From: Pristiophorus japonicus
Taxonomy: Eukaryota
Length of the DNA stretch: 64,000 bases
Assembly: GCF_044704955.1 (NCBI RefSeq)
Contig: NC_091987.1
Coordinates: 188,790,001 to 188,854,000, forward strand
Reading direction: 5' to 3'
Within the stretch, counting starts at the first letter, position 1. Every line of letters begins with the position of its first letter. This document shows positions 22,989 through 55,943 of the stretch, one piece after another. Below the pieces are notes generated by a model. That model ran no database searches. It was not told the origin of the DNA and saw nothing but the letters and a program-made list of their open reading frames with translations. Made by a program: the position numbers and the translations under genes.

Positions 22989-23058
22989 ATGAACAGTAAA
23001 ATGGGATGCATGTTGGTGCAACTGATTGTGCTCCTACTTCCAGCGATGGGTATAGTAG
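22989..23058 (+). CDS. Ig-superfamily receptor exon 1: signal peptide MNSKMGCMLVQLIVLLLPAMGIV(G)
   Basis: ATG, hydrophobic core and a perfect donor AG|GTAAGT. It is 70 nt (phase 1) and in frame with the next exon. Confidence 0.85.
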
Positions 23059-23762
23059 GTAAGTGATCTGATTAAAGTCCTTTAACATTCAATCCTTGAA
23101 TTGAATTCATTGGCTTCGGACTGAGAGTTATTACAAGTAGAAGTTACCCGGTGTGGAATATTCTAAAGTATAGTTGAAGAATTGACCAATAATAGTGTTC
23201 AGAACAACAGTATCAAAATAAAGTTTGTGCAGTTAAAATAATTTGAATAATTGTTCAAAGGCCCACATCATGTTGGTTGGGTTATGTCTCTATATTAGTG
23301 ATATTTAGATGGAGATACTGTTTTGTGTATTATTGATTGTGAATCTTCAAACTGCTATAAGGCTCGGATTGTTTAAAGTTGTGCAGATCTTGGGTAAAAG
23401 TAGATCATTCACGGAACAGTGTTCAAAGTGATGGCAGCTACTTCACAGAACTAGAAACAAAGATCTCCCATAGATTATTATGGTGACATCCTGATCAGTC
23501 TGTGACAGTTTGTGTGGAATAAAACAAGTTCAAAACAGTAAAAAAAATTACTGCAGTATATCAGGTCTCAAATCATCTCATAGTTTAGAATGAAGTCTGA
23601 AACAGACAAATATATTTTTTTAATTCTTTACATTAGATCCAATAGGAAGGATATCTCAAATTCAGCACTGTTTAAATTGAGTTTTTGATATTCCCCATTT
23701 ATGTTGAAAGAATGACTAAATGGCCCCAAACTGAAAATGACAAACTTATTTTATTCCATCAG

Positions 23763-24110
23763 GTATCCCGCTGATTGAGGAGGTGACCCAGCCGCGTCTG
23801 GTCAGTGTCCGGAGAGGAGAGTCAGTCACAATAAACTGTACATTTATTCAAAATGGAAGCGATGGTGACTGGGTCTGGGCATACTGGTACAGGAGTTCTC
23901 CAGGGGCGTCTGATATTGTTTTTCAAGACACTTTCCCGACCTGCATTCCTGACGTTACTCGGGGTGTTTTCAGGCGCTGTATTTCATCACTGAAGATTGA
24001 AAATGTTTCTTTTCATCACTCTGACAATAATTATACATGCGTGGTGAAGGCACTATCAAGCTACCCACCAGTGGAGAGAAAGGGACAAGGATCACAGATA
24101 CAGATTTATG
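23763..24110 (+). CDS. Ig receptor exon 2: V-set domain with germline J-like G strand
   Basis: Acceptor TTATTCCATCAG|, then VTQP..GESVTINC..WYR..SLKIENV..YTC..KGQGSQIQIY, donor G|GTAAAG. 348 nt, phase 1-1. Confidence 0.92.
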
Positions 24111-24239
24111 GTAAAGTACTGCATATATTATTGCAGTTGGAGAACAATGGCATTTATTTTTTATACACATACATGCATACAACTACAGACCAGTCTCAGG
24201 CTTAGTGCATTTTGTAGGACAGGCTGTGCTTATTCGGCT

Positions 24240-25420
24240 AGGTGACCATGGCCACATGTTTCCCTATCTCGACGGGTCCGTGGCGGGTGACATCGGTGGT
24301 GGGTCCCAACCCAGCTGCTGTCTCCATCCTGGCCTCTGAAATGAATTTCCCCTGTCTGGGCTTGTTAAGCCCGCCCAGCGCGTTTCCCAGCCAATTACAG
24401 GAAGCGGGTCTGGTGACATCATTTGACGATGCGTCGTCAGCCAGTTTCCTTCAAGGGACCATGGCCAACTTTATTTTGAAATTCGGGCTGTCAGAGTTCT
24501 ACAGCATTGAGGTGCTGCAAACACTGACAAATGCTGCACAGAGGTGCAGGGCTGCTTATGCTTCAGGAGAGAGTCACAACATGCAGAGAGGTCCTCTTCT
24601 CTTCCCATGGGCAGAAGAGACCTCCCCAGGAGAGCAACACAGCCTGGTTGCAGGTTGCAGAGGAGGGCACAAGCAGGAATGTTGTCAGGGGAACCTGGGT
24701 GCAATGGCGCAAACATTTCAATGATCTCAGTAAATCACAAAACTTTAGTAAAAAGCCACACTCAACCTCATCTTGCTGTGCCTCTCATCACATCCCCATC
24801 ATTCTGCCTTCTCTACCCTACTCCTGCACATCCTTACTCACACCAACTTACTTGCACCTCCACTAATCCCTCTCTATCTATCTATTATCACATCCCCATC
24901 TCACTAGCTACGTCTCACACTTGTGCAGTCATACCAACTAACAACAAACAATGGTAGGCATTAGGGTCTTTTAAGCAATGTTAATATAAAGTTTCTGTTA
25001 ACGTAGTATCAAACATTGAAACCTTTATTTTCAACACTGTGCTCTTCGACAGATGTGTGTACACCTTTAGAGGTGACTTAGTGAGTTGCAGTGAATGGTG
25101 AGACATAACAGTACCCCCCACAATTGTGATGAGTGTGAAAGGAATGGCTTGGGCACAATAGGGATGCTTTATGGTGTTGGTGTGGGGTGGTGCCAACCTG
25201 GTGCATCATGTGGCAGCCAGGGTGTACAGTGTCAAGTGAAGTAAATCTGGCCCTGGTGAGGCCAACCCTGGCCTCCCGGGCAGCAATGTGGTCAAGTGTC
25301 AATGCCCGCTGTCCTGTGCAGCATCAGGTGATTGCGGAGAAGATTGGTGGAGCAGTTGTTGGTGCTGCTGGTGTTGGCGATGATGATGGTGGGATTCTGA
25401 GGATCAAGGTGAGAGAGCAC
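24240..25420 (+). mobile_element. Harbinger-like remnant with a frameshifted Myb/SANT-like ORF
   Basis: REVLF..KRPP..AWLQVAEE.TSRNVV..TWVQWRKHFNDL, similar to the domain at 46654-46878. Confidence 0.6.
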
Positions 25421-26003
25421 AGGGTAAAAATGATCAGAGGGTAAATAAAATTGAGAGTTAAACAAGTGGCTCAAAGACAGGTGTGGGAGAAATAGGTTTT
25501 GGTTCATGGGACACTGGCACCAGTACTGAGGTAAGAGGGAGCTGTTCTGATGGGACGGGCTTCACTTGAACCATGTTGGGACTAGTGTCCTGGCAAATCA
25601 CATAACTAGGGCTGTAGAGAGGGCTTTAACCTAATTAGTAGGGGCGAGGGTTCAGATGAGTGGAAATTTAAAAAGTCAAAGAGCAAGGAGAAGGCAATAG
25701 AGCAGAGTAACACTGGGGGAATTGATAACTAGAGCGTAACAGGAAGCGACAGAATGTATAAACATAAGAGTGTATCAGAAAGTGGGGTCAAAGCAGTGAA
25801 AAATGGTAAAAAAACAAAATTAACAGCTCTTTATCTGAATGCACGCAGCATTTGTAACAAAATAGATGAGTTGATGGCACAAATAGATATAAATGGGTAT
25901 GATATGATAGCCATTACAGAGACATGGTTGCAAGGTGACCAAGGCTGGGGACTGAATATTCAGGGGTATTTGACAATGCGGAAGGATAGACAGAAAGGAA
26001 AAG

Positions 26004-29000
26004 TGTTACACTCATAATAAACGGTCAAACTGAGTACTGTGTGTGATGAGCAACTGTGACCTTAGCTCCTTTATTAAGGTTCCAGAGTGCAGGTACCTAG
26101 TGGGTGGCCTGCTTATATACTGTACTCCCAAGGGATGCTGGGATCCCTTGGGACTCCAACAGGTAGGCCCTCTGGTGTCATGTGTGATGCAGGTTACAAG
26201 GGGTTAAATATATAACATCACTCCCCCATAAAGTCAACAGTACATTTATTTACAAGGTGAGGCGATCTGGGGCTTTGCGCTCCCTTGTCGATCGTCTCGG
26301 TACAAATGCTGGTGTGGGTGGGTTGGTCAGTTCTTCACTGGGCTGTTGGGCAGCCGGCCTTGCTGGGCTGCTGGGGATGATGAGTTCAGTTTCGTGGTCA
26401 ACTGTGATGTTGGAAGGTCAAAGTTGGTGGTGTCCTCTTCAGGTTGTTCGTAGCTGTTGGTGAACGGCAATTTGATTTGGTCCAAGTGTTTTCTGTGTGT
26501 TTGTCCATTGGTCAGTTTGACCTGAAACACCCTACTTCCCTCTTTGGTTGTGACCGTGCCAGCGAGCCATTTGGGATCATGTCCATAATTGAGCACAAAC
26601 ACATTGATCTCAAGATCGCGTGACAAATTTGCGCGGTCATGGTATACACTTTGTTGATGCCGCTTGTCCTCCATGTGATCATTAGATCAGGGTGGACAAG
26701 AGAGAGCATTGTTTTAAGCACCCTTTTCATGAGTAGCTCAGCTGGGGGAATCCCAGTGAGTGAGTGGGGTTTGGTGCAGTAGCTGAGCAGTACTCGGGAC
26801 AACTGGGTCTGCGGGGAGCCTTCTGACACGCGTTTCAAGCTTTGCTTGATGGTCTGAACTGCCCGTTCTGCCTGGCCGTTGGATGCGGGCTTGAACGGGG
26901 CAGATGTGACATGTTTTATCCTGTTGTGGGTCATGAATTCCTTGAATTCAGCACTGGTGAAGCACGGCCCATTGTCGCTGACTGGAACATCAGGCAGGCC
27001 ATGCGTTGCAAACATGGCTCGTAAGCTTTCAATGGTGGCCGTGGATGTGCTTACAGACATTATCGCACATTGAATCCATCTTAAGTAAGCATCCGGGACA
27101 ACCAAAAACATTTTGCCTCGGAATGAGCCCGCATAGTCTACATGGATTCTTGACCACGGTTTGGATGGCCATGACCACAAACTTAGCGGTGCCTCTCTGG
27201 GTGCATTGCTCAACTGAGAGCAAGTGTTGCACTGGCGCACACATGACTCTAAACCTGAGTCGATGCCAGGCCACCATACGTGGGATCTGGCTATGGCTTT
27301 CATCATTACGATGCCTGGGTGGGTGTTGTGCAATTCACAAATAAATGTGTCTCTGCCTTTCTTGGGCAAGACTACGCAATTGCCCCACAAAGGACAGTCC
27401 GCCTGCAGGGACAGCTCATCTTTGCGCCTATGGAACGGCTTAATCGCTTCCTACATCTCCACTGGGACACTGAACCAGCTCCCATGGAGGACACAGTTTT
27501 TTTTACCAAGAACAGTAAAGGATGCTGGCTGGTCCAGATACTGATCTGGCGGGCGGTAATGGATTTCTCATTCTCAAATGCCTCCATGACCATGAGCAAG
27601 TCCGCTGGCTGTGCCATTTCCACCCCGGTGGTGGGCAATGGTAGCTGACTGAGAGCATCTGCGCAGTTCTCTGTGCCCGGTATGTGGCGGATTACATAGT
27701 TGTATGCCGACAACGTGAGCCCCCATCTTTGGATGCGGGCAGAGGCATTGGTATTAAACCCTTTGCTCTCCGAGAATAGCGATACGACCGGCTTGTGATC
27801 AGTTTCAAGCTTGAACTTGAGGCCAAATAAGTACTGATGCATTTTTTTTATCCAGTAAACGCGTGCCAGAGCCTCTTTTTCAACCATGCCTTAGGCCCTT
27901 TCGGCCTTGGACAAACTCCTGGATGCATACGCAACTGGTTGCAAAATTCCCGAGTCATTAGCCTGTTGTAACACACACCCAACCCCGTTTGATGATGCAT
28001 TGCAAGCTAACACCAATCATTTACATGGGTTATACAGGACATGCAGTTTGTTAGAACACAATAAGTTTCTGGCTTTCTTAAAGGCAGCCTCTTGTGAATT
28101 CCCCCATACCCAGTTATCTCCCTTGCGCAGTAGCGCATGTGGGGTTCTAGCAGGGTGCTTAACCCAGGTAGGAAATTACCGAAATAGTTAAGGAGCCCCA
28201 GGAATGACCACAGCTCCGTCACGTTCTATGGTCGCGGCGCGTTCTTGATGGCCTTCGTCTTGGTGTCTGTGGGTCTGATACCGTCTGCTGCGATTCTCCT
28301 TCCGAAGAATTTGACGTCTTGTGCCAGGAAAACACATTTCGTGTTTCAACCTGAGCCCCACAAAATCCAACCGACTAAGAACCTCCTCCAGATTCTTCAA
28401 GTGCTCCATGGTGTCCCGACCTGTAACCAATACATCGTCCTGAAAGACCACTGTGCAAGGAACCGACTTTAGAAGGCTCTCCATGTTCCGCTGGAAGATC
28501 GCTGCGGCCGACCGAATCCCGAATGGGCACCGGTTGTAGATAAACAGACCTTTGTGCGTGTTGATGCAGGTGAGGCCTTTCAAAGATTCCTCTAGCTCCT
28601 GCGTCATGTAGGCCGAGGTCAGGTCCAGCTTAGTGAACGTCTTCCCTCCAGCCAGGGTCGCGAATAGGTCGTCTGCCTTGGGTAGTGGGTACTGGTCCTG
28701 CAGCGAAAAACTGTTACTTTATCGTCCCCACAAATTCTAACCGTACCATCCTGCTTGAGTAATGTAACAATCGGACTGGCCCAGTTGTTGAATTCCACCG
28801 GCGCGATGATGCCTTCACGTCCAGCTTGATTTCCACTTTTTCACGCATCATGTACGGTATAGTGGATGGGTCGCGTACCGGGAACCAAATGGATCTGCAC
28901 TTTCGCCACCGAAAAGTTTCCAATGCTGGCTCGAATAACAAAGGGAACTTGCTTAGAACCCAGGTACATGCGGTGTCGTCGACGGACGAAAGTGCTCAGA

Positions 29001-30417
29001 TGTCGTCTCAGTTCCAGCAGATTTTCCCCAGCCAGCTTCTGCCAAACAACATGGGGCCATCCCCTGGCACAATCTATAGCAGGGGTTCGTGTACTGCTCC
29101 ATCATAGGAGACTTTAATTTCAGCACTGCCAATTACAGGGATTAGTTCCTTGGTCTAAGTCCTTAGTTTGCTGTGAATGGGGCTGAGCTTGGGCCTGTGT
29201 GCCTTCTTTCCCCACAGCCTGTCGAAGACCATTTTATTCATTATGGACTGACTTGCCCCCATGTCCAGCTCCATAGACACTGGAATACCGTTAAGTTCAA
29301 CTTTCAACCTAATTGGTGGGCATTTCGTCGTGAACGTGTGTACCCCGTACACCTCTGCCTCCTCAGTACAAGTTTCCAATTCCGTCTGATCCACTGTGGA
29401 TCGATCTTCCTCTGCAACGTGGTGGTTTGCAGGGTTTGCAGCTCGCCTGCACATTTGTTGAGGTGTCCCATTGTTCTGCAGCCATTACATACGTAATGCT
29501 TAAAGCAGCATTGAGGAGGCCGATGATCACCCCCGCAGCGCCAACAGGGTGTTAACTGCCTCGCATTAACAGATGATGGCGAACTCTGGGTCAATTGAGG
29601 CCGGGCCACAGCAGCCAGCGTGTATATTCTGCCCTGTACATTTCTGCTCAAAACTGACGTCACTTTATGCACAGTATGCCTGGGCTATCGTTATGGCTTA
29701 ACTCAGATTCGGAGGTTCTACAGTCAACAGTTTGCGAAGGATTGTCTCATGTCCGATGCCCAGTACAAAAAAGTCTCTGAATTTGTTCTAGGAATCCCTC
29801 AAACTCACAATATCCTGCAAGGTGCCTTATTTTGGCGACGTAGCTCGCTACTTCCTGGCCCTCTGATCGTTGACATGTGTAGAACCGATATCTCGCCATC
29901 AAAACACTTTCCTTAGGATTTAGGTGCTCCCAGACCAGCGTACACAATTCTTCGTATGATTTCTCTGTTGGTTTTGTCGGGGTCAGGAGGTTCTTCATGA
30001 GGCTATAGATTGTTGCCTCACAGACAGTAAGGAGGATCGCCCTTCGTTTGGTAGCGTTCTCGTCCCTTTCCAGCTTGTTGGCCATGAAGTATTGGTCGGA
30101 TTCTCTCCACGAAGGCCTCCCACTCGTCCCTTCTGAGAACTTCTCCAGGATGTCGACTGTTCTTTGTATTTTCGCGTGGTTGTTTGTTACCTTGTCGCCA
30201 ATTGTTACACTCATAATAAATAGTCAGACTGAGTACTGTGTGTGATGAGTAGGTGTGACCTTAGCTCCTTTATTAAGATTCCAGAGTGCAGGTACCTAGT
30301 GGGTGGCCTACTTATATACTGTACTCCCAAGGGATGCTGGGATCCCTTGGGACTCCAACAGGTAGGCCCTCTGGTGGTCAGGTGTGATGCAGGTTACAAG
30401 GGGTTAAAAACATAACA
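26004..30417 (-). mobile_element. Full-length degenerate Gypsy (Mag-like) LTR retrotransposon
   Basis: LTRs at 26004-26217 and 30203-30417, perfect TSD AAAAG, PBS TGGCGACAAG. Gag, protease, RT (VVFQDD), RNase H and integrase (HVDYAG, SDNG, SNGQAER) are present, with frameshifts. Confidence 0.95.
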
Positions 30418-31099
30418 AAAAGGAAGTGGGGTAGCTCTATTAATAAAGGATGTGATCAGTGCACTGGTGAGAAATTATATTGGCTCAGAAGATCAAGATG
30501 TAGAATCAGTTTGGGTGGAGATAAGGAATATTAAAGGGAAGAAGTCACCAGTGGGCATAGTCTATAGGCCCCCTAACAGTAGCTACATTGTTGGACGGAG
30601 TATAAATCAAGAAATAATCGAGGCTTGTAAAAAAGGAACGCAATAATCATGACCGATTTTTCGTATTGATTGGTGAAATCAAATTGGCCAAGGTAGCCTT
30701 GAGGGAGAATTCATAGAGTTTATTCAGGATAGTTTCCTTGAACAATACATTGAGGAACCAACCAGGGAGCAAGTTATCTTAGATTTTGTACTGTGTAATG
30801 AGACAGGATTAATAAATGATCTAGTAAAGGATCCTCTTGGAAAGAGTGATTATAGCATGGTTGAATTTCAAATTCAGTTGGAGGGTGAGAAAGTTGGATC
30901 TCAAACTTTAGCTTCAGCTTAAATAAAGGAGGCAGAGTTGGCTAAAGTGAACTGGGAAAACAGATTAAAGTGTGAGACAGTTGATGAGCTGTGGCGGATA
31001 TTTAAGGAGATATTTCATAACTCTCAACAAAAATATATTCCAATGAGAAGGAAAGATTATAAGAGAAGGGATAACCATCCATGGCTAACTAAACAAATT

Positions 31100-31255
31100 A
31101 AGAACATAAGAACATAAGAAATAGGAACAGGAGTCGGCCATATGGCCCCTGGAGCCTGCTCCGCCATTTAGTATGATCATGGCTGATCCGATCATGGACT
31201 CAGGTCCACTTCCCTGCCCGCTCTCCATAACCCCTTATTCCCTTATCGGTTAAGA
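31100..31255 (-). mobile_element. Short CR1 3' end inserted antisense into the larger CR1
   Basis: (AAGAACAT)n tail and CR1 3' UTR; TTAAGAA on both sides is a likely TSD. Confidence 0.8.
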
Positions 31256-33884
31256 ATGGTATCAAATTGAAAACAATGGCATATAAAGTGGCCAAGATTA
31301 GTGGGAGTCCAGAGGATTGGGAAACTTTTAAAAACCAGCAAAGAACGACTACAAAAATAATGAGAGGGAAGATAGATTATGAAACTAAACTCGCAAGAAA
31401 TATAAAAACAGACAGTAAGAGTTTCTACAGATATATAAAAAGGAAGAGAGTGGCTAAAGTAAATGTTGGTCCTTTGGAGGATGAGACTGGGGAATTAATA
31501 ATGGGGAACAGGGAAATGGCAGAGACTTTGAACAAATATTTTGTATTGGTCTTCACGGTAAAAGACACTAAAACATGACAATAATGGATAACCAAGGGAG
31601 GAACTTAAAATAATCACCGTCACTAAAGAAGAAGTACTCAGTTAAATAATGGGACTAAAGGTGGACAAGTCCCCTGGACCTGATGGCCTGCATCCTAGGG
31701 TCTTAAAAGAAGTGGCTGCAGAGATAATGGATGCATTGGTTGTAATCTACCAAAATTCCCTGGATTCTGGGGAGGTCCCAGCAGATTGGAAAACTGCAAA
31801 TGTAACGCCCCCTATTTAAAAAAGGAGGCAGACAGAAATCAGGAAACTATAGACCAGTTAGTCTAACAGCTGTCATTGGGGAAAATGCTGGAATCCATTA
31901 TTAAGGAAGCAGTAGCAGGACATTTGGAAAAGCTTATTTCAGTCAAGCAGAGTCAGCATGGTTTTATGAAAGGAGAAATTACATTTGGCAAATTTGCTGG
32001 AGTTCTTTGAGGATGTAATAAGCAGGGTGGATAAGGGGGTACCAGTGGATGTGGTGTATTTGGATATCCATTTTATAAGGTGCCACATAAAATGTTAATG
32101 CACGAGATAAAAGTTCATGGGGTTGGTGGTAATATATTAATTAGCATGTATGGAGGATTGGCTAACTAACAAAAAACAGAGAGTTGGGATAAATGGCTCA
32201 TTTTCCAGTTTGCAAACAATAACTAGTGGGGTGCCACAGGGATCAGTGCTGGGACTTCAACTATTTACAATCTAAATTAATGATTTAAATGAAGAGGCAG
32301 AGTGTAATGTAGCCAAGTTTGCTGATGATACAACGATGGGTAGGAAAGCAAGTTGTGAGGAGGACACAAAAAATCTGCAAAGGGATATAGATAGGCTAAG
32401 TGAGTGGGCAAAAAATTGGCAGATGGAGGATAATGTGGGAAAGTGTGAGGTTATCCAGTTTGGCAGAAAAAAACCCCAAATTATTATTTACAAATTAACA
32501 AAATGCTGCAGTACAGAGGGGCCTGGGGATTCTTGTGCATGAAACACAAAAGTTAGTATGCAGGTACAGCAAGTAATCAGGAAGGCAAATAGAATGTTGG
32601 CCTTTATTGCAAAGGGGATGGAGTATAAAATACGAGATGTCCTGCCACAAGGGTATTGATGAGGCCACAGCTATAGTACTGTGTACAGTTTAGTCTCCTT
32701 ATTTAAGGAGGGATATACTTGCATTGGAGGCAGTTCAGAGAAGGTTCATTTGGTTGATTCCTGAGATGAAGGGGTTAACTTATGGAGAAAGGTTGAGCAA
32801 TTTGGACCTGTACTCATTGAGTTCAGAAGAATGAGAGGTGATCTTATTGAGACATATAAGGTAATGAGGAGGTTTGACAAGCTAGGTAAAAAGAGGATGT
32901 TTCCACTCGTGTGGGAATCTACAACTAGGGGGCATAGTTTTTGAATAAGGGGTCTCTGATTTGATGAGGAGGAATTTCTTCTCTCAGAGGGTTGTAAATC
33001 TGTGGAATTCTCTGCCCCAGAGAGCTGTGGAGGCTGAGTCATTGAATATATTTAAAGCAGAGATAGACAGATTTTTGAGTGATAAGGGAGTAAAGGGTTA
33101 TGGGGAGCAGGAAGGGAAGTGGAGTTGGGCCCATGATCAGATCAATCATGATCCTATTGAATGGCGGAGCAGGCTCAAGGGGCCAAATGACCTATTCCTG
33201 CTTCTATTTCTTACGTTATGTTCTTATGAGTATAAAGGGCACCTATGCTGTGAAATAGATGGTAGTTGAACTTTAGATGACAGAAGCGATCTGTCAATGG
33301 TGAGAAAGGTAATGAGGGGGTCACTGGATGGAGACTTGTGTTAAGATTTGCAACAAGGTGAATCTGTTGTGGAAATGCAGTGAGGAAGAGCTTGTGGCTG
33401 AGGGAAGATATCTCTGTAAGGTGGGAGCTTTTACTTGACATTTGTAGCTGTCAACACATCAGCTGATTCAACGGCCACTGACCTTACGCCTTTGATACCT
33501 TTCCAATCTTCTCCAGACTTACATCATAGCCTATGTCCTTTGATCCACCAATCATGACCTCTTGTTCATGCCCCCCCCCCCGCCCCCCCCATTTATATTC
33601 TTATATTCCATTGTTGCAAAGCCTTCATCCACTCTCTGTACTCTATTGATAAATCTCTCCACCCTACTACATCCTAACTTTTTTTTATTACTGCTTGGTG
33701 TACATGCTGTGAAATTCCTTAGGAGTTTTTATTACATTAAAGGCAAATTGTTGTTGGCAGTGATGTCATCATTTTTGCTGTAATGCATTAGGGAGTCAGA
33801 TCGCTAGCGTGTCTCCTGAGTTATATTGGTATTTTGGCATTAAGGCGCACAAAATAAATCTGCTGCCTACTGACTGTTGCCCAT

Positions 33885-34078
33885 CCTCCGGAAGTTTCTA
33901 CCGTGGATGGTGCTTTGGTTACTGGACATCAGTCCACCTGCTCTGCTAAAGGTTTCTACTCTGAGAATATCTCTTTTAAATGGCCAGATCATGGAACAAG
34001 CCTTTCTAACATCACTACACTGACTACAAAAAATGCTGGTGGTGGTACATCTATTGTCACCTAAAGTGGGAGACCACA
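33885..34078 (+). pseudogene. Degenerate duplicate (pseudo-exon) of the C1-like exon
   Basis: PPEVSTVDGALVTGHQS-TCSAKGFYSENISFKWPDHGTSLSNITTLTTKNAGGGTSIVT* aligns with exon 3. It has deletions, a stop and no upstream AG acceptor. Confidence 0.88.
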
Positions 34079-34430: not shown

Positions 34431-34733
34431 GACCTCCTGAAGTTTCTACTGTGGATGGTGCTTTGGTTGCTGGACGTCGTTCCAACCTGACCTGCTCTGC
34501 CAAGGGATGGTACTCTGAGGGTATCTCCTTTACCTGGGCATGCCATGGAACAAACATCTGCACAAACGTCATCACACTGACCTCGAAAAGAACTGGTCAT
34601 GGTACATCTGTTGCCACCAGCCAGCTTGAGATCGTCCCTAAAGTGAGTGACCATGGATCTGTCTGTAGCTGTCAGATCAACCATGTGACTTTCAGACAGC
34701 CAGTAATAAATGAGATCAAATTGCATGTTATGT
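34431..34733 (+). CDS. Ig receptor exon 3: C1-like constant domain
   Basis: Acceptor TCTGTCTCAG|, then LTCSAKGWYSEGISFTW..SQLEI..CQINHVTF, donor T|GTGAGT. 303 nt, phase 1-1. Confidence 0.9.
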
Positions 34734-39494: not shown

Positions 39495-39530
39495 TTCTGT
39501 GGATTCTGTAATCCCATAACTCGTCGCCAC

Positions 39531-42093: not shown

Positions 42094-42353
42094 ATAAAAA
42101 CATAAGAACATAAGAACATAAGAACATAAGAATTAGGAACAGGAGACGGCCATCTAGCCCCTCGAGCCTGCTCCGCCATTCAATAAGATCATGGCTGATC
42201 TGGCCGTGGACTCAGCTCCACTTACCCGCCCGCTCCCCGTAACCGTCAATTCCCTTATTGGTTAAAAATCTATCTATCTGTGACTTGAATACCTCAATGA
42301 GCTAGCCTCAACTGCTTCCTTGGGCAGAGAATTCCACAGATTCACAACCCTCT
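42094..42353 (-). mobile_element. Short CR1 3' end, antisense arm of the head-to-head pair
   Basis: (CATAAGAA)n tail and ~230 bp that are the reverse complement of 44333-44571. Confidence 0.9.
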
Positions 42354-44571: not shown

Positions 44572-45953
44572 TTTATAACTGTTGAGCAGGAGGTCCGTTC
44601 CTCTAATGACATGGCATGGACATCGTCCCATTTCCAGTTTAGTTTTGCCAGCCAGCTTCTCCCCAGCAATGCTGGAGGATCTCCGGGGACAATCCACAGG
44701 GGAAGTCAGTTCATTGTCCATTTGTGTGTGACAGAGAGCATGGCACTGCCGAGGACTGGTACAATTTCTTTGGTATAGGTCCTTAGTTTGGTGTCGACCC
44801 TTGTGAGTTTTGGTCTGTCTCTTTCAAGCGGCCACAGTTGTTCAAATTGTTGAGCGCCCATGAGAGATTGACTCGCTCCTGTATCCAGCTCCATGATGAC
44901 AGATATCCCGTTGAGTAGGACCCTCATCATTATTGGAGGCGTCCTGTCATAGGAGCAGCGGCCATTGATAGTGTTGACCCGCTGTACATCGGTGTCCCGG
45001 GTACTGTCCCCACCGTCTTCTGGCCCGCTTTCCGACCCATCCGATTCGTATACCAGCCGAGCTGCCGTTTTTTTGCACATGCGGGCCATATGCCCTGTAT
45101 ATTCACAGTTCCTGCAAACAGCCTGCTGAAATCGACATTCCCTTGATGAGTGCCCACCCTCACACCTCGAGCATAGACTGCTTGCAAAGAATGAGCTGCG
45201 CCTGGCTGACCTCTCTTGAGCTTCTCTCAGTTTGTAGTTGATTGCTCGCATTGTGGGTTGATGAGGTGTGAATGGCCGTTCCTGTGGCCCTTGATGGCTT
45301 CTGTTGCCACTGCTTGCTGTCAAAAGCCTGTTCTGCCGGTTTTGTCCGTGTGTGGGGATAGCAGCTTTTCTAATGCTGTGAACTCCTTGTTCCATTATTT
45401 CATTAGTTGTCGTACCTGCATTGTAAATCAACCTCGTTTCTTCTTCCCCTACCAAGAATGTCTGTGCAACCAGTGCTGTTGCCTCTAAGGTCAGATTCTT
45501 GGTCTCTATGAGCTTTCGGAATATGCCTGTGTGGCCTATTCCTTCAATGAAAAAGTCTCTCAGCATTTCTCTCCTCAGTTCATCGGAGAACTCACATAAA
45601 CTAGCCAACCTCCGAAGTTCCGCCACGAAGTCGGGTATGCTCTGGCCCACACAACGTCTGTAGTTGTAGAACCTGTGTCTGGCCATTTGTCGGCTGCTCG
45701 CTGGCTTCAGGTGGTCTCTTACCAGTGTGCTCAATTCTTCAAATGACTTGCTTGCTGGTTTCTCGGGTGCCAACAGATCCTTCATTACAGTGTATGTTTT
45801 CGAGCCACAGCTGGTCAAGAGATGGGCTCTTCTCTTGTCTGCCATATCATCGCCTAACCAGTCTTTGGATACAAAGCTCTGGTGGAGCCTTTCTATAAAG
45901 TCCTCTCAATTGTCTCCCGCATTGTACTTTTCATTTGATCCGTTATTCGCCAT
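44572..45953 (-). pseudogene. Second gag-protease copy, truncated at the CR1 junction
   Basis: ORF 44706-45845 encodes gag, knuckles and LDTGAS; paralogous to 38193-39494. Confidence 0.9.
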
Positions 45954-48390: not shown

Positions 48391-49875
48391 GCATGTCCGC
48401 AGGTGATGGTTGTGTTATATCTCCATCTGGGTGTATGCAATTTGTTGCAATGTATGGGGACTGGGGACCACGCTCCTACTTTGCCTTTGTATTCTGCTAC
48501 TGGACATGTTAAATATGACATTTATGTCAATGGTTGAAAAAGTGGGGTGTGGGCGGGGTTTGGGTGTTATTGCCTGTGATGCTTATGATTCCAGACCAAT
48601 ATTGGTATAAATTTTTGTTATTGAGCATAACCTTGTTACGCATTGTCTCAGATAGCTGTACCGTTACACTTTGGTGATTCCTTAACATGAAATGGTTAAA
48701 TACAACTTAACATCAATCAACATAAACTTTAACTGGCACCAAGGTGATGGGCACCATTGATGTATGAGCTGCACACACACAGCAATGTGTTAGCGTTGTC
48801 ACTCACATCAACGCTCTTTCAGGTAAATCATTCAGATATCAGCTCCTTACTCTTACGAGTGGGATTTTAAAAATGCCAAATATATTGCTGCCGTTCGTTC
48901 AAAATAGTTCCACTTTTTGTGGGTAGTTTATTGAGCGAGCGATATTGTGGGCGATATGTGTGTGAGGTGGTGAAATTGACGCTGGCCGATCTGCTGGGCG
49001 TTAGTTTCGGTAAATATGCTCTTCATGACAAAAAAAAATATTGAATCTCAGCGTTAAATCAGTACGGAAAGTAACGCTGGCCGATATTATGGACATTAAT
49101 TTCGCCCATTCTGATGATTCCGCCCCAAAAAAGTGAGCGGGCGATAATATTTTTTCCCGGCGTTCAGCACATACGGAAGGTAACGTTCGGCGATAAGTTT
49201 CCTAAAAAATGGGCATCAGTTTGCATTTTGTGCCTAAATGGGCGATATCTGTGAGTTTACATCATTTCAACGGTAAACTGGGCGTTGAGCATGCAAAAAA
49301 AGTGCAGGTTCTAGCCCCGTGGCTCTATTTGAGGAAAAACAGGGAGTTACCCAGTGTGCTGATCAATATTCCCCCTAGCAGCCCATACCATCAGTAAAAT
49401 CATTAACTACTTGCTCACCTCATGCCTGGTTTGGAACACCTCTGCCGCTTTCAACCATTTACTCTAAAAACATCACTCATTTTGTGATGTGCTTTGGAAA
49501 CATCCTGTTATTTAAATGCAAGTGTGATCATAATATTATTTACTAACTTAGCTCTCTATTTTACCAATGCTACTATGGACTGAACTCTTCCCCCTTGTTA
49601 CTTCTAAGCTGAAAATATGACATTCTGCAAACACTTCCTTTTACCCATACCTTCTGTGTTGAAATCAAACCCCATTGCATTGTCCCTTACTCGAACTCTG
49701 TCTCAGCCAAGACCTCCAAATTGTACAACATCTCAGATTTCTTTTCCTCTCACAATCTTCAGGCATTTAAAATCAAAGCTGGGCCTCAGTTGACCTGACT
49801 TAACCTCATCTACACTTTTCAACCTTGCTCATGTTCTACACTTGGGGCCTTGATCCTTCAACCATCAATCATCCC

Positions 49876-51655
49876 AGAAGGGGAAGGGGGGTGGAGGGGA
49901 AGGGAAAGTGGGGGGAGGAGAAGGGGGGAAAGGAGAAGGGGAAGGGGGGAGAAGAGAAGGGGAAGGAGAGGGGGGAGGGAAAGGAGAAGGGGGGGAAAGG
50001 AGAAGTGGGGGGGAAAGGAGAATGGGGTGGGGAAGGAAAAGGGGGAGGGAGGCTGAACGGGCCGGGACCAGCCGGGCCCAGGACTTCGGGCAGGGCCCAT
50101 CCCCAGCACCAGATTTACAGGTAGGTGGCGTTGGGTCGGGTCGGGTCCTGGGTCCGGGGTCGGGAGCGCGGGTCGGGTCGGGGGGAGCGCGGATCGGGGT
50201 CGGGGGGGGCGGAGGGAGGTTGGGTTGGGGTCCAGTCCGGGGGGGGGGGGTGCGGTCGGGAGCACGGGTCGGGTCAGGGTGGGGGGGGGAAGAGGGAGGT
50301 CGGATTGGTTTGGGTAGGGAGGGAGCGCGGGTCGGGTCGGGTCGGGGGGGGCGGGGGGGCAGAGGGAGGTCGGGTTGGGTCAGGTCAGTTCGTGTCGGGG
50401 GCGGGGGGAGGGAGGTCATGTTGGGTCGGGTCCGGTCCGGGTGGCGGGGGGGGGTCTGGAGCGCGGGTCGGGTCGGTGGGGTGGTGGGAGGGAGGTCGGT
50501 TCGGGTCGGTTGGGGGGGGAGGAGGGAGGGAGAGGGAGGTCAGGTCGGGTCGGGGGGTGGAGTGCGGGTCGGGTCCAGTCCGGGGGGTCGGATCCGGTCC
50601 GGTCCTGGGGTGGGGGGGGGCAGGGGTCGGGTCGGGGCCGGGTCCGGTCCGGGGGTGGGGGGGGGGCGGGGGAAGTGGGAGTCGAGTCGGGTCGGGAGGA
50701 AGCAGGAGCTGGGTGTGGGAGGAGCCTTATGCACGCAGCCCCAGTGAGGCCATTCGGCCAGGGCTAGGGGCTGTGTGCTTCGGGCCCCTCCCACACAGTT
50801 TTGGGCGCCTGGAGCTACTGCACATGCGCGCTCACTGTAACGCGCATGTGCAGAGGTCCCGGCACTGTTTTCAGCGCAGGGACCTGGCTCCACCCCCCCA
50901 CAGCTCGTGCTGCACCGAGCCCGACTCCAGAGGACCAGCAGGGAGCCAGAGAATCTGTAAGTTTTTTTTAGGCGCACTTTGTGGCACGAAAAACGGGCGT
51001 CCAGGTCGGGGCTGCGCCGTTCTAGGCGTGGCCCGAAACTTGGGCCCATTGACACTGACAGACAGAGAGAGAGACACTGACACTGACAGACAGACAGAGA
51101 GAGAGACACACACACTGGGAGGGAGCGGGGCGCCCATCCCAGCACGCTGTTGGAGGTTTCCCGGTGCTGCAGTCAGTGAGTAGAAAATGTTTTATTTATT
51201 GATTTTGAAATTTTTTTAATTAATTTTTTTTGATTGATTTATTGGTTGATTTATTGATGTATTTATCATTTATTATTGATGATGGCTCTTTATTTGTAAA
51301 ACTGAAGTGCTGAATGTTTGTAAACTTCCCTTTAAATCCCCCCCCCCCCCATTCCCTCCACCTGATTTGTAACCTACGCCTGATTTTCTAAGTGTAGGCA
51401 AGGTTTTTCTGAGCGTACAAAAACCTACACTTACTAAGTTAGTTTGGAATAAGTTTTCACTGCCTAAACTTTAAAAACAGGTGTAAGTGGCCGGACACAA
51501 CCCCTTTTGAAAAAAAAAATTGTTCCAAAGTGAAACTGTTCTATCTGACTAGAACTGGAGCAAACTAAATGCCGAGAATTGCAATTTATAAGATACTCCA
51601 TTCTAAACCAGTTGCTCCAAAAAAACAGGAGCAACTCAGGCTGAAACTTGGCCCC
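49876..51655. mobile_element. Rearranged copy of the G-rich MITE family seen at 58103-59993
   Basis: 49876-51047 matches the right part in + orientation, and 51051-51655 matches the left part in - orientation. Confidence 0.85.
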
Positions 51656-51659
51656 ATTA

Positions 51660-52450
51660 AGTAGCAAGTAACAGTCGCGCCACACAAGTGCCAGGCAATG
51701 CCCATCTTCAACAAGCGAGAGTCTATCCACCTCCCCTTGATATTCAATGGCATTACTATCGCCGAATCCCCCACCATCAACATCCTGGGGGTGACCATTG
51801 ACCAGAAATTTAACTGGACCAGCCACACAAATACTGTGGCAACAAGAGCAGGCCAGAGGCTGGGTGTTCGGCAGCAAGTGTTTCATCTCCTGAGTCCCCA
51901 AAGCCTTTCCATCATCTACAAGGCACAAGTCAGGAGTGTGATGGAATACTCTCCACTTACCTGGATGAGTGCAGGTCCAACATCATTTAAGAAGCTTAAC
52001 ACTAGGACAAAGCTGCCCACTTGATTGGCACCCCATCCACCACCTTAAACATTCACTCCCTCCACCACTGGCATACCGTGGCTGCAGTGTGTAACATCTA
52101 CAAGATGCACTGTAGCAACTCGCCAAGGCTTCTTCGGCAGCAAGACCCAAACCCACAACCTCTACCACCTAGAAGGACAAGGGCAGCAAGCGCATCGGAG
52201 CACCATCACCTGCAAGTTCCTCTCTAAGTTATACACCAAGCAAACTTGGAAATATATCGCCGTTCCTTCATCGTCGCTGGGTCAAAATCCTGGAACACCT
52301 TCCCTAACAGCACTGTGGGGGTATTTTCCCCACAAGGACTGCAGCGGTTCAAGAAAGCGGCTCACCACCACCTTCTCAAGGGCAATTAGGGATAGGCAAT
52401 AAATGTTGGCCTTGTTAGTGATGCCCTAATCCCAGAATGAATAAAAAATA
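51660..52450 (+). mobile_element. 3' fragment of the same LINE family as 3933-7097
   Basis: ESPTINILGVTID..IYKAQVRSVMEYS; 3' end TTCTCAAGGGCAATTAGGGAT..GAATAAAAAA. Confidence 0.9.
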
Positions 52451-52600
52451 CTTCCTAATATAAAACAAAAGGTTAAATATTATATATATTTATACTTAAT
52501 TTACAGTTATCATATTCCAGCAAATATAGGTAAATTCCAGTAAATTCTAATTTTTTTCTCTGTAAATACCATGATGCAAAATCTTTTATTCCACTGTTAG

Positions 52601-52921
52601 ATGGGCCACAAGATCCCACAATAATGTACAGGTTGAACAAGAATGGCAGTTATCATCCTGGGACGAGTAGCCCCATCACCGTCCCTACTGACTCATTCCT
52701 GGAACTGAGTTGCTCCGTGGACAGTAACCCAGCCTCCTCTGTGATCTGGGTAAAGGATGGGGAGAACCACACTGAGATGTTCCAACTCGCAGCTGGATTA
52801 AATAGTTCAAAACTGAAGATAAGTCATTTCCAGCCTGAAGTTAGAGGAGTCTACTGGTGTTTGGCAAACAACAGCTATGGCCGGGGAAACGCAAGTGTTT
52901 GGATAAAAGCTGTACAGGAAG
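52601..52921 (+). CDS. Ig receptor exon 4: C2/I-type Ig domain
   Basis: Acceptor CCACTGTTAG|, then YGP..LELSCSVDSNPASSVIWVKD..LKI..GVYWCLANNSYG, donor G|GTAAAT. 321 nt, phase 1-1. Confidence 0.92.
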
Positions 52922-53303
52922 GTAAATAGAAATTAAAAGAGTAATGATGAACTTGATGCATAAATTATTAAGGTGACGTTCTGTGACATGGATACAAAAA
53001 GCTCCGTCTCCAGTAATTGAATTTGCAAAACAATGAATGATTTATAGGTGTGATTGATGTGCGACATATTCTGCATCAGATGGAATATATTTCTATTTTA
53101 TATCTTGTTCATATATAATCATAGCACAGATATTGTGCTGTGAGTTTATAATAGAGTTCTATCAGTTGCTTTGAAGGAATATATTTTGTCTTTGCTTGAA
53201 TACGAATACACAATATGGTTTGGAGAACTGTTGGATTATGAGAATATCTGACAGATTAAGAAGAGGTGACTTGCCTCTATTTACGAGAAGAATGGAGATC
53301 ATT

Positions 53304-53886
53304 GACCCAGATTTTGCTGGAGCAGGGAATCTTGCAGCGCGCCCTGTTAGCTGGACTTGTGCACGTTTAGGTTTGAACATTTTTGTCCAACAAAGTTGCG
53401 GGAAGTACGAGCTGATAACAGTGCAGTGAGAGCAACAGGCAATCTGGGACCTTGGTGAACAATGGGACAAAGAGGGTATGTCTTTAACTAATGAGAATAA
53501 ACTATTTAAAATTTTACATTTTAAAAATATCCAACAACAATTCACTACCTGAAGGAATGAGTCGCCACACTTTTAATTGTTCACTTACTGGGCAAGAGAA
53601 ATTGTTTAGCAGTCATTAACAATTATCACCTCATTAAAAGGGCGTTTGATGTTAATTACTAGACTTAACTTGCTGTGGCCAGTTTACTGAGCAATTAATG
53701 TGCAAATGCAACAACGTCATGAAAATGCCATTTGTTGAAGCTATTAATGTGCAAATGGACCACTTACTTGAGCTGATTCTCAATTCATGGGACATCACTT
53801 CCTCGCCTTAAGTTGCTGGCCAATTTGCACATTAATAATGAAGTGCGTCATTCACACGCTTTTATTTTTTCAGCAAATTTTGGGCC
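53304..53886. mobile_element. Old MITE
   Basis: Imperfect TIRs GACCCAGATTTTGCTG / CAGCAAATTTTGGGCC. Confidence 0.5.
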
Positions 53887-54145
53887 AACATCTGTGATTG
53901 TTACATTTGCCAAACCAAAATTCCAAAAGGCCTTGGGGAGGTGGGGGGGGGGGATTTAAACCAAGATGGGTGGGAGAGGGTCCAGTAAGAGATTGAAATG
54001 ATGTGTTTTTGTCCATCAGTTTGAACATTTTTCATGTGGCATATGTTGAAGTACATGGAATCTTTAGGCTCGGTATTGTGTTTTAAACAATCCAAACGTT
54101 CTTCATTTAAAAATGCCACACTGATCTTTAACAAATATCTTCTAG

Positions 54146-54234
54146 ATGCCACTGGAATTTGGTCTTTTATTATCAGATCCATTGCTGTTGCTGCATACAT
54201 TTTGATTCTAATCACACTGAACTGCCTGGTTTAA
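54146..54234 (+). CDS. Ig receptor exon 5: transmembrane segment with Arg, DATGIWSFIIRSIAVAAYILILITLNCLV*
   Basis: Acceptor TATCTTCTAG| is phase 1 and in frame with exon 4. There is a ~24-aa hydrophobic run and TAA at 54232-54234. Confidence 0.8.
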
Positions 54235-55904: not shown

Positions 55905-55943
55905 GAGCTAACTACTTTCACGGTGACAAGAGAGCTTACATGA
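55905..55943 (+). other. Candidate terminal exon of the Ig receptor (phase 0: ELTTFTVTRELT*)
   Basis: Strong acceptor CCATTTTATATTTCAG| compatible with donor AAG|GTATTG at 54279/54280. AATAAA at 56231. It lies downstream of the TAA, so it is non-coding in this allele. Confidence 0.35.

What the first reader, a model, noticed from the sequence alone, without database searches (positions are those of the whole stretch)
22989..54234. Non-rearranging V(J)-C1-C2 receptor with a transmembrane arginine: candidate undescribed activating immune receptor
Seen: five in-frame phase-1 exons giving ~376 aa. The V exon begins VTQP and ends KGQGSQIQI (a J-like GxG(T/S) motif within one exon, no RSS). Domain 2 has C1-type CxAxG(W/F)Y..I..W and CxIxH, domain 3 has CxxDSNP, and the TM has Arg near its outer end (FIIRSI). 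Established: germline VJ domains occur in NKp30, SIRP and CD8; C1 domains are largely confined to adaptive-immunity-related proteins; TM Arg in NKp30, NKp46 and LILRA pairs with FcR-gamma/CD3-zeta. Inference: this combination matches none of NKp30 (V), SIRP (V-C1-C1), Siglecs (V-C2n) or nectins (no TM Arg, longer tail). It may be a distinct family relevant to antigen-receptor origins.
Basis: partly seen in the sequence, partly recalled or inferred. Interest (0 to 1): 0.85.

Follow-up and report, generated by a model that had tools for sequence, protein, structure and literature searches.

The report
Shark activating-type VJ-C1-Ig paired receptor
This is a real, spliced sawshark gene for a tail-less cell-surface receptor with an arginine in its membrane anchor. 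It looks like the activating partner of an old, unstudied family of inhibitory immune receptors that public databases label "Siglec" by automatic naming.

Summary
Five GT-AG, phase-1 exons (22989-54234, +) encode leader, V(J), C1-set and I-set domains and a hydrophobic C-terminus with Arg and no tail (376 aa). Contigs of a second study splice exon 4 to exon 5 and on to an unnoticed 3'UTR exon.

Exons 2-5 are identical to a public Pristiophorus japonicus model auto-named "Siglec 13", which has a different, signal-less N-terminus.

The gene belongs to a family found in sharks, rays, chimaera, coelacanth, paddlefish and arowana:
- Long forms have an uncharged TM and a conserved tail with ITSM/ITIM motifs (TIYAVV, VSYADIVI, SEYSVVR).
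- Short forms in three shark orders share the segment F(I/V)(I/V)R(S/F)I(A/S)VAA. A coelacanth short form and a distant sawshark paralogue also carry Arg at the outer end of the TM.

Arg occurs in all five short forms and in none of the ITIM-tailed long forms aligned.

The V domain resembles Ig-lambda and TCR V, with the canonical Cys-Trp-Cys and a GxG bulge. Domain 2 is C1-set by Pfam and predicted fold. The Siglec label is not supported.

Best reading (0.6): an activating partner that signals through an acidic-TM adaptor. Rivals are a GPI anchor or a silent decoy. I found no paper on the family. Any link to antigen-receptor origins was not tested.

The parts
21492..21537 (+). Upstream internal exon used by the public gene model P0171 in place of the leader exon. 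It gives a signal-less N-terminus, and the model's first 30 residues lie outside the window.
   Evidence: tblastn of P0171 residues 31-53 hits 21471-21539. The exon is bounded by CAG|...|GTAATT in phase 1, and no 8-mer of P0171 residues 1-31 occurs in the window.
22989..23058 (+). Exon 1: ATG and hydrophobic leader (MNSKMGCMLVQLIVLLLPAMGIV), GTAAGT donor, phase 1.
   Evidence: It is homologous to the leader of the Heptranchias short form P0170 (MLAQLIALLLPGTSIV). It was not covered by the one read-laying run.
23763..24110 (+). Exon 2: end of the leader plus a VJ-type V-set domain. It has four family-invariant Cys, Trp, YxC and a KGQGSQIQIY G-strand with a GxG bulge. There is no RSS.
   Evidence: Pfam V-set 30.7 bits. 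Best PDB sequence hits are Ig lambda V. The AF2 model has pLDDT 91.4, and its best structural matches are antibody VL, TCR V-alpha and VpreBJ. No heptamer nearby. Identical to P0171 residues 53-169.
33885..34061 (+). Decayed duplicate of the C1 exon (pseudo-exon) inside intron 2.
   Evidence: phmmer 70 bits to the exon-3 peptide. blastn gives 75% identity over 187 nt with a 6-nt deletion. The frame has a stop, and there is no AG acceptor before the homologous start.
34431..34733 (+). Exon 3: C1-set domain (LTCSAKGWYSEGISFTW ... VCSCQINH).
   Evidence: Pfam C1-set 32.0 bits against C2-set_2 26.3. Top PDB sequence hits are UrIg2, Ig, SIRP-gamma, IgNAR and MHC II C1 domains, with no Siglec among the best 60. 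The AF2 model has seven strands. Its top 50 Foldseek hits are nearly all MHC II, beta-2-microglobulin and IgNAR C1 domains.
52601..52921 (+). Exon 4: I-set/C2-type domain (CSVDSNPASSVIW ... GVYWCLANNSYG).
   Evidence: Pfam Ig_3 43.8 and I-set 41.4 bits. PDB matches are generic I-sets and MAG Ig3. An X5 contig begins exactly at 52601, and another leaves the exon at the donor.
54146..54279 (+). Exon 5: DATGIWSFIIRSIAVAAYILILITLNCLV, stop at 54232-54234, then 45 nt of 3'UTR up to a GT donor. AATAAA at 54241-54246 is read through in the observed contig.
   Evidence: Kyte-Doolittle 19-residue means are 2.0-2.3 over IWSF...NCLV.
55905..56250 (+). Exon 6: 3'UTR only. It is observed to 56131, AATAAA lies at 56231-56236, and the end is approximate.
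   Evidence: X5 contig record 10 continues from 54277 to 55903-56131, and X5 depth is present in bins 55865-56232. The acceptor is ttcag|GAGC.

Best explanation
The window holds one host gene of the Japanese sawshark. It encodes a type I membrane glycoprotein with an N-terminal antigen-receptor-like V(J) domain, a C1-set domain, an I-set domain and a single membrane segment. That segment carries Arg about 6-7 residues in from the outside, and there is no cytoplasmic tail. The gene is the short, charged-TM member of a paired family whose long members have an uncharged TM and a conserved ITSM/ITIM tail. Shown here: the exons, part of the splicing, the domain types, the family, and the strict link between Arg and the absence of an ITIM tail. 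Inferred: the V domain binds the ligand, because it is the fastest-evolving part. The long forms would recruit SH2 phosphatases and inhibit. The short form would assemble through its TM Arg with an Asp-bearing ITAM or YxxM adaptor dimer (of the CD3-zeta, FcR-gamma or DAP12 kind) and activate, as SIRP-beta, Siglec-14/16, LILRA and NKp46 do. The ligand and the adaptor are unknown.
For: Spliced contigs come from a run in a different study from the DNA runs. The family alignment shows that the 11 ITIM-tailed long forms in A1 (13 counting A3) have an uncharged TM and tails with D(T/I)IYA.V, EEVSYADIVI and (T/S)EYS.VR. The short forms of Pristiophorus, Heptranchias and Scyliorhinus share IW.F(I/V)(I/V)R(S/F)I(A/S)VAA(Y/F)I.IL.TL. 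The Latimeria short form (ISFAVRAVLVV followed by a basic tail) and paralogue P0096 (FLLRSVSV followed by a 43-aa tail) also carry Arg at the outer end of the TM. That makes five of five short forms against none of the long ones. The short forms also share their own leader, distinct from the MQLLLKLL leader of the long forms. Identity between the Pristiophorus and Heptranchias short forms is 54% in V, 79% in C1, 76% in D3 and 68% in the TM segment. The TM segments of short and long forms are only about 20% identical. No ITIM-tail exon lies in the window.
Against: There are no basic residues after the hydrophobic segment in the three shark short forms (they end NCLV, SCLVNC and SYLLTAE). Small residues (D-A-T-G) lie just before the segment, which is also the layout of a GPI-attachment signal. 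No adaptor was identified, and a 2014 survey found no FcR-gamma chain in shark data (PMC4016189). The RNA evidence consists of assembled contigs from one run of unrecorded library type. Two other runs of the same study show nothing on the exons. The leader exon and the e1-e2, e2-e3 and e3-e4 joints were not observed directly, and the public model uses a different 5' end. The ectodomain tree does not group the short forms (Heptranchias short pairs with Heptranchias long at 88/66). A single origin of the short forms therefore rests on the leader and TM exons alone.
Confidence: 0.6

Rival explanations
1. The hydrophobic C-terminus is a GPI-attachment signal. The mature protein would be a lipid-anchored V-C1-I molecule that signals through raft partners or acts as a decoy or adhesion molecule. 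The Arg would be removed along with the signal.
For: The protein ends 4-6 residues after the hydrophobic run, with no basic stop-transfer residues, in all three shark short forms. Small residues (DATG, DSTL, EGDT) precede the run, and about 17 uninterrupted hydrophobic residues follow the Arg-Ser.
Against: The Arg-bearing segment is as conserved as the ectodomain across three shark orders. The same outer-TM Arg occurs in a coelacanth short form and in a sawshark paralogue, both of which have basic cytoplasmic tails and so must be transmembrane. The would-be spacer, IWSFIIRS, is itself hydrophobic, which makes a 25-residue span.
Confidence: 0.15
2. It is a transmembrane but non-signalling partner, comparable to SIRP-gamma or a decoy for the inhibitory paralogue's ligand. 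The Arg would serve retention, assembly or dimerisation rather than coupling to an ITAM adaptor.
For: No adaptor is known for it, and FcR-gamma was not found in sharks in 2014. Secreted or truncated isoforms exist in the family (Mustelus P0172 and Rhinoraja P0010), so ligand-sink functions are plausible.
Against: The strict association of a TM Arg with loss of the ITIM tail, kept from sharks to coelacanth, is the classic signature of adaptor-coupled receptors. That signature is established knowledge for SIRP-beta, KIR-S, LILRA and Siglec-14.
Confidence: 0.15
3. It is what the databases call it: a CD33-related Siglec that binds sialic acid.
For: Automatic names for the family are Siglec 5, 6, 8, 12, 13 and 14, MAG-like and sialoadhesin-like. 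The family profile matches MAG Ig2-Ig3 (40 bits) and Siglec-8 D2-D3 as colinear two-domain stretches. The nearest ESM Atlas clusters carry Siglec names. The tail motifs resemble Siglec ITIM and ITIM-like motifs (from memory).
Against: The V domain keeps the canonical B-F Cys pair and Trp, which are invariant, and there is no invariant Arg anywhere in the V domain. Its sequence and fold neighbours are Ig lambda and TCR V, not Siglecs. Domain 2 is C1-set, and no Siglec is among its best 60 PDB hits. Domain 3 scores about the same against neurofascin, Robo and titin as against MAG. The literature states that fish lack CD33-related Siglecs (PMC7226832).
Confidence: 0.06
4. It is a non-functional or mis-spliced gene copy decaying after duplication.
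For: A decayed C1 pseudo-exon lies in intron 2. The public model lacks a signal peptide. One Cys (NIC in domain 2) is unique to this species and leaves an odd Cys count.
Against: All five coding exons are open with intact GT-AG sites. Every family-invariant residue is kept. Spliced contigs exist. Orthologues with the same leader and TM exon are intact in two other shark orders.
Confidence: 0.04

Closest known systems
SIRP family (SIRP-alpha, -beta, -gamma)
   Same: A non-rearranging VJ-type V domain is followed by a C1-set domain. The family pairs inhibitory members (several Tyr motifs of the xxYADL and SEYxSV kind, from memory) with short-tailed members carrying a basic TM residue. The family profile aligns colinearly with SIRP-alpha D1-D2 (57.6 bits). 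SIRP-gamma D3 is the best single-domain PDB match of the C1 exon (21.6 bits). Coelacanth, turtle and frog SIRP-like proteins are among the C1 hits.
   Different: The third domain is I-set rather than C1-set. The TM charge is an Arg near the outer end, not a mid-membrane Lys. The V domain has an extra invariant Cys pair. Orthology and synteny were not tested. Identity in C1 is only about 28%.
Activating/inhibitory CD33-related Siglec pairs (Siglec-5/14, Siglec-11/16) and MAG
   Same: The logic is the same: a paired receptor with ITIM plus ITIM-like tails on one side and a basic TM residue with a short tail on the other. The ectodomains are kept alike between partners (Heptranchias short and long forms are 85% identical in C1). 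The D2-D3 region aligns with MAG and Siglec-8, and the D2/D3 junction V.YGP resembles theirs.
   Different: The V domain has the canonical disulfide, a J-like G strand and no conserved Arg for sialic acid. Domain 2 is C1-set rather than C2-set.
Nectin / PVR (CD155) family
   Same: The layout is the same: V, then a C1-like domain (Pfam C2-set_2 also passes on domain 2, at 26.3 bits), then a C2/I domain, in a single-pass membrane protein.
   Different: No nectin or PVR chain appeared among the best 60 PDB matches of any exon or of the family profile. Nectins have long tails with afadin or PDZ motifs and no TM charge (from memory).
UrIg / UrIg2 (non-rearranging shark VJ-C1 genes; PMC12227049)
   Same: Both are germline-joined VJ exons with a split leader, followed by C1-set domains, in elasmobranchs. 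UrIg2 is the top-ranked PDB chain for the C1 exon.
   Different: That rank is the sum of three weak domain matches (17.6, 10.1 and 13.4 bits). UrIg genes have only C1 domains (3 to 11), no I-set domain and no ITIM/Arg pairing. The V domains are not specifically alike.
LILRA, KIR-S, NKp46, Fc-alpha-RI, GPVI (adaptor-coupled Ig receptors)
   Same: The Arg lies in the outer third of the TM, followed by about 18 hydrophobic residues and a minimal tail. This is the mechanism I propose for the gene (from memory).
   Different: Those ectodomains are built only of C2-type domains, and there is no sequence relationship.

Membership tests
Elasmobranch/osteichthyan VJ-C1-I family (auto-named Siglec-12/13/14-like) | Colinear V, C1 and I-set domains with the family-invariant residues: four Cys in V, GxG, C..W..C.CQ..H in D2, the YGP junction, and C.VDSNP..W..YWC.ANN.YG in D3. 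| tested here: met
   Alignments A1 and A3 show all invariant columns present in the window protein. Identity to the other family members in A1 is 41-67%. The Heptranchias short form is 54%, 79% and 76% identical in V, C1 and D3.
Elasmobranch/osteichthyan VJ-C1-I family, short (activating-type) subtype | Own leader, Arg in the outer TM, and no ITIM tail. | tested here: met
Siglec | N-terminal V-set domain with the conserved sialic-acid-binding Arg. | tested here: not met
   No invariant Arg appears in the V domain of A3. The residue after the F-strand Cys is V, A, E, K, M, I or L across members. Where the Arg sits in Siglecs is from established knowledge.
Siglec | Non-canonical intra-sheet V disulfide with loss of the B-F pair. 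| tested here: not met
   The canonical Cys(B), Trp(C) and YxC(F) are invariant. Fold neighbours are VL and TCR V. Which Cys pair up was not measured, because no coordinates are returned.
Siglec | C2-set domains after the V domain. | tested here: inconclusive
   D2 is C1-set. D3 is I/C2 and similar to MAG Ig3.
SIRP | V - C1 - C1 ectodomain. | tested here: not met
   V and D2 fit, but D3 is I-set/Ig_3 with no C1-set hit.
SIRP | Orthology or synteny with the SIRP cluster, and CD47 binding. | not testable with these tools
C1-set domain (for domain 2) | Pfam PF07654 above its gathering score and better than the C2 models, with seven-strand A-B-C-D-E-F-G topology. | tested here: met
   The exon alone scores 32.0 bits (cut-off 21) against C2-set_2 at 26.3. 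In arowana and paddlefish members the scores are 62 and 68 against 47. The fold model and Foldseek hits agree. Caveats: C2-set_2 also passes; it scores higher in Narcine (28.4 vs 23.4) and in the coelacanth member (44 vs 33); and the chimaera member passes neither at 1e-3.
Rearranging antigen receptor V gene | RSS heptamer/nonamer at the 3' end of V, with a separate J. | tested here: not met
   The J-like strand is inside the V exon, a GT donor follows directly, and no heptamer lies within 23601-24400.
Nectin/PVR | Specific sequence similarity to nectin or PVR domains. | tested here: not met
   None appears among the best 60 PDB matches. This is only a ranking test.
GPI-anchored protein | Omega site, spacer and C-terminal hydrophobic tail, with release by PI-PLC. 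| tested here: inconclusive
   The layout is compatible, but no predictor was available. Conservation of the Arg in tailed relatives argues against it.

The most novel reading that the evidence does not exclude
The family would be an ancient gnathostome paired-receptor lineage. It would join an antigen-receptor-like VJ-C1 head (as in SIRP and IgL) to the membrane-proximal Ig domain and ITIM/ITIM-like tail typical of CD33-related Siglecs and MAG. On this reading it is a surviving relative of the stock from which Siglec-type and/or SIRP-type receptors arose. It would be kept in cartilaginous fish, coelacanth and basal ray-finned fish and lost or remodelled in tetrapods. Its TM-Arg members would also imply an Asp-bearing signalling adaptor in sharks that has yet to be found.
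Probability: 0.2. Interest if true: 0.75.

Novelty: new variant of a known kind. Interest (0 to 1): 0.55.

Why it matters
Paired activating and inhibitory Ig receptors are well known in mammals, birds and teleosts but barely charted in cartilaginous fish. This family has one conserved inhibitory gene in each elasmobranch species seen here, and an Arg-TM partner in at least three shark orders and in coelacanth. That would place the paired-receptor principle, and hence an acidic-TM adaptor, at or before the split between cartilaginous and bony fishes. An earlier survey found no FcR-gamma chain or LRC-type receptors in sharks (PMC4016189). The family also shows that the "Siglec" names now spreading through shark, coelacanth and fish annotations are misleading, because the V domain lacks the lectin hallmarks. 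It adds a third germline VJ-C1 gene type in sharks, beside UrIg and UrIg2. That could serve as an outgroup or comparison in work on antigen-receptor origins, although nothing here shows a special relationship.

Tried and rejected
- **Homologue search, C1 exon alone:** no candidates. This reflects the tool's length window and says nothing about relatives.
- **Synteny:** Linkage to MHC, LRC or SIRP regions is also untested. All that is known is that each pair lies on one contig of the same length.
- **Spliced protein:** I did not build or search the joined 376-aa sequence. Exons were searched one by one by reference. For whole-protein work I used the database proteins P0171 and P0170 as the tools returned them.
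- **Other Ig exons or an ITIM tail in the window:** none found, apart from the pseudo-exon.
- **Other host genes in the window:** I saw only ORFs that look transposon-derived by eye, and did not run them through any library.
- **Ectodomain tree:** relations between short and long forms are unresolved (open forks; Heptranchias short pairs with long at 88/66). It cannot date the duplication.
- **UrIg2 as a specific relative:** rejected, because the score is summed over three weak domain matches.
- **PRARP (Fu et al. 2019):** considered as a possible identity. The paper is not held. From memory, PRARPs have a single V domain, so they are not this family.
- **ESM Atlas:** only Siglec-named clusters, and I treat these as leads.
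- **Complex prediction:** not used, because no shark adaptor sequence was available by reference.

Full report
**Observation.** The exon model is:
- e1 22989-23058
- e2 23763-24110
- e3 34431-34733
- e4 52601-52921
- e5 from 54146, with TAA at 54232-54234

Each exon is bounded by AG and GT, every intron is phase 1, and the total is 1131 coding nucleotides, or 376 residues. No RSS-like heptamer lies within 23601-24400. The J-like strand (KGQGSQIQIY) is inside the V exon and is followed directly by a GT donor.

**Domain types.** Each exon was searched on its own by reference.
- Exon 2 is V-set (30.7 bits).
- Exon 3 is C1-set (32.0 bits, cut-off 21), ahead of CD80-like C2-set_2 (26.3).
- Exon 4 is Ig_3/I-set (43.8 and 41.4 bits).

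Against PDB sequences, the V exon matches Ig lambda V domains best. The C1 exon matches UrIg2, Ig, SIRP-gamma, IgNAR and MHC class II C1 domains, with no Siglec among the best 60. Exon 4 matches generic I-set domains and MAG Ig3.

AlphaFold models built on family alignments agree. The C1 exon folds with seven strands (pLDDT 81). Its top 50 Foldseek matches are almost all MHC II, beta-2-microglobulin and IgNAR C1 domains. The V exon (pLDDT 91) matches antibody VL, TCR V-alpha and VpreBJ.

One caveat applies to the C1 call. C2-set_2 also passes its threshold. It scores higher than C1-set in Narcine and in the coelacanth member, and the chimaera member passes neither. In arowana and paddlefish members C1-set wins clearly, at 62 and 68 bits against 47.

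**Transcript evidence.** Five runs of one organism hold the stretch. X1-X4 come from one DNA sample. X5 comes from a different study and holds 21% of the sampled words, roughly the exonic share of the stretch. When laid on 52001-57500, X5 gives a 524-nt contig that joins 52759-52919 to 54144-54277 to 55903-56131. The two-base offsets are AG repeats, so the joints are the predicted GT-AG sites. Two things follow:
- Exon 4 is spliced to exon 5 as predicted.
- Exon 5 is not the last exon. It runs 45 nt past the stop to a donor at 54279 and joins a 3'UTR exon at 55905, with AATAAA at 56231-56236.

A second X5 contig (494 nt) begins exactly at the exon-4 acceptor and carries 333 further letters. 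That number equals exon 3 plus 30, but the letters were not shown. Two sister runs (X6, X7) have no depth on the exons, so expression may be tissue-restricted. These are contigs of unrecorded library type, so they show presence and splicing, not level.

**Identity.** A HMMER scan of 1.84 billion representatives with the C1 exon found single-stretch hits of 52-79% identity at residues 131-234 of proteins 380-494 aa long. These are elasmobranch proteins with automatic names such as "sialic acid-binding Ig-like lectin 12/13", "myelin-associated glycoprotein-like" or "sialoadhesin-like".

One later hit, P0171 (405 aa, UniRef, Pristiophorus japonicus, "Siglec 13"), is identical to exons 2-5 from GIPLIEEVTQP to NCLV. 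The window is therefore Japanese sawshark, and the gene already has a public automatic model.

That model replaces the leader exon with an internal exon at 21492-21537 plus exons outside the window, and it has no signal peptide. I take it as the more likely coding start, but I could not observe it.

**The family.** Alignments A1 and A3 show a colinear family present in:
- sharks of several orders
- skates, rays and an electric ray
- the chimaera Callorhinchus
- coelacanth, paddlefish and arowana

Conserved features (invariant or nearly so in A1 and A3) are four Cys in V (the canonical B and F pair plus a second pair), the GxG bulge, C..W..C.CQ..H in domain 2, a YGP junction, and C.VDSNP..W…YWC.ANN.YG in domain 3.

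The long forms (about 480-520 aa) have an uncharged TM and a tail with three conserved tyrosine motifs. These are D(T/I)IYA.V (ITSM-like), EEVSYADIVI (ITIM) and (T/S)EYS.VR (ITIM), kept from rays to coelacanth.

**Short forms.** The window gene, Heptranchias P0170 and Scyliorhinus P0186 end a few residues after a shared hydrophobic segment:
- Pristiophorus: DATGIWSFIIRSIAVAAYILILITLNCLV
- Heptranchias: DSTLIWIFVIRFIAVAAFIFILTTLSCLVNC
- Scyliorhinus: GDTWLWIFIVRSISVAAFILILVTLSYLLTAE

A coelacanth short form (ISFAVRAVLVV…INKKPKAH…) and a distant sawshark paralogue (FLLRSVSV… with a 43-aa tail lacking ITIM) also have Arg at the outer end of the TM. Arg is present in all five short forms and in none of the 13 ITIM-tailed long forms aligned in A1 and A3.

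The short forms also share a leader distinct from the MQLLLKLL leader of the long forms. Heptranchias has both a long and a short gene on one 33.7-Mb contig, and Scyliorhinus has both on one 106.7-Mb contig. No ITIM-tail exon lies in this window.

**Evolutionary pattern.** Between the sawshark and sevengill short forms, V is 54% identical, C1 79%, D3 76% and the TM segment 68%. The TM segments of short and long forms are only about 20% identical. In the ectodomain tree the short forms do not group. Heptranchias short pairs weakly with Heptranchias long (88/66), and their C1 domains are 85% identical. This fits either exchange between partners or slow divergence, and I cannot separate the two without DNA from the other species.

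A DNA-run contig matches only 52593-52720, with 4-5 differences and higher depth. It hints at a near-identical paralogous D3 exon elsewhere in the sawshark genome.

**Mechanism.** The domain types, the family and the link between Arg and the missing ITIM tail are shown. The function is inferred. By analogy with SIRP-alpha/beta, Siglec-5/14, KIR and LILR (established knowledge), I propose three steps:
- The fast-evolving V domain binds a shared or related ligand.
- The long forms inhibit through SH2 phosphatases.
- The short form pairs through its Arg with an Asp-bearing adaptor dimer and activates.

The position of the Arg resembles receptors coupled to FcR-gamma or CD3-zeta (from memory): it sits in the outer third of the TM and is followed by about 18 hydrophobic residues. 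A 2014 survey, however, found no FcR-gamma chain in shark data (PMC4016189), so the partner is open.

The main rival is a GPI signal. The three shark short forms have no basic residues after the hydrophobic run, and small residues precede it. Against this, the segment is as conserved as the ectodomain. The same Arg also occurs in relatives that certainly have cytoplasmic tails.

**Comparison with known families.**
- *Siglec.* The label does not hold for the lectin part. The V domain keeps the canonical Cys-Trp-Cys, has no invariant Arg, and has VL/TCR-like neighbours. Domain 2 is C1-set. The label has a basis in domains 2-3 and the tail. The family profile aligns colinearly with MAG Ig2-Ig3 (40 bits) and Siglec-8 D2-D3. 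Domain 3 alone, though, scores the same against neurofascin, Robo or titin. The literature says fish lack CD33-related Siglecs (PMC7226832).
- *SIRP.* V and D2 fit, with a colinear match of 57.6 bits to SIRP-alpha D1-D2 and up to 64.7 bits to lambda light chains. D3 does not fit.
- *Nectin/PVR.* The layout is shared, but these proteins never appeared among the top matches.
- *UrIg2.* Its top rank for the C1 exon is a sum over three weak domains. UrIg genes have only C1 domains (PMC12227049).

I found no paper describing this family. The library is incomplete, so this is not proof.

**Verdict.** The gene is a real, probably activating-type member of a conserved VJ-C1-I paired-receptor family. 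The family is unstudied but already auto-annotated. Its relevance to antigen-receptor origins is untested. I rate it a new variant of a known kind, with interest 0.55.

**Limits.**
- The joined spliced protein was not built or searched.
- The leader exon and the first three joints rest on sequence logic, orthology and the public model, not on reads.

Noticed in passing
window 33885-34061 (+): A decayed tandem copy of the C1 exon lies about 370 bp upstream of exon 3. It is 75% identical at the DNA level, has a 6-nt deletion and an in-frame stop, and lacks an AG acceptor. It is evidence of exon duplication in this gene.
   Followed up: partly
window 21492-21537 (+): A short internal exon (CAG|...|GTAATT, phase 1) is used by public model P0171 in place of the leader exon. 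The model's first 30 residues are not encoded in the window. It could be an alternative 5' end, or a fusion with something upstream.
   Followed up: partly
window 52593-52720: DNA run X1 has a second contig (320 nt, depth 14.2 against 5.9) that matches only this part of exon 4. It differs at 52637 A>C, 52653 T>C, 52666 A>T and 52690 G>A. It is probably a near-identical paralogous exon elsewhere in the same genome, perhaps from the inhibitory partner.
   Followed up: no
window 49800-51200 and 58600-59800: Two G-rich, strongly GC-skewed low-complexity arrays translate to Gly/Arg/Glu-rich ORFs. Both end in the same peptide, ..EEPY.RSPSEAIRPGLGA.CFGPLP, so they are two copies of one repeat element.
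   Followed up: no
window 26300-28700, 35400-39400, 44700-45900 (- strand); 30400-33300, 42300-44550, 61634-62677 (+ strand): Long ORFs here look by eye like LTR-retrotransposon gag, protease, RT and integrase and LINE reverse transcriptase. They fill the introns and flanks. I saw no other host gene in the 64 kb. None of these ORFs was checked against a library.
   Followed up: no
protein P0185 (Hemiscyllium ocellatum, 610 aa): The epaulette-shark long form has a tandemly duplicated V domain (V-V-C1-I-TM-ITIM), so domain number varies within the family.
   Followed up: no
proteins P0172 (Mustelus, 359 aa), P0010 (Rhinoraja, 380 aa), P0002 (Heterodontus isoform X5, 418 aa): Family isoforms include a form without a TM (probably secreted), a form truncated after the TM, and a form that skips domain 3. 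Alternative splicing therefore appears to diversify the long genes.
   Followed up: no
window 34548-34556 (NIC in domain 2): This species has Cys where relatives have Ser or other residues (N-I-S becomes N-I-C). The mature protein therefore has an odd number of Cys. This could be a free thiol, an inter-chain bond or a neutral change.
   Followed up: no
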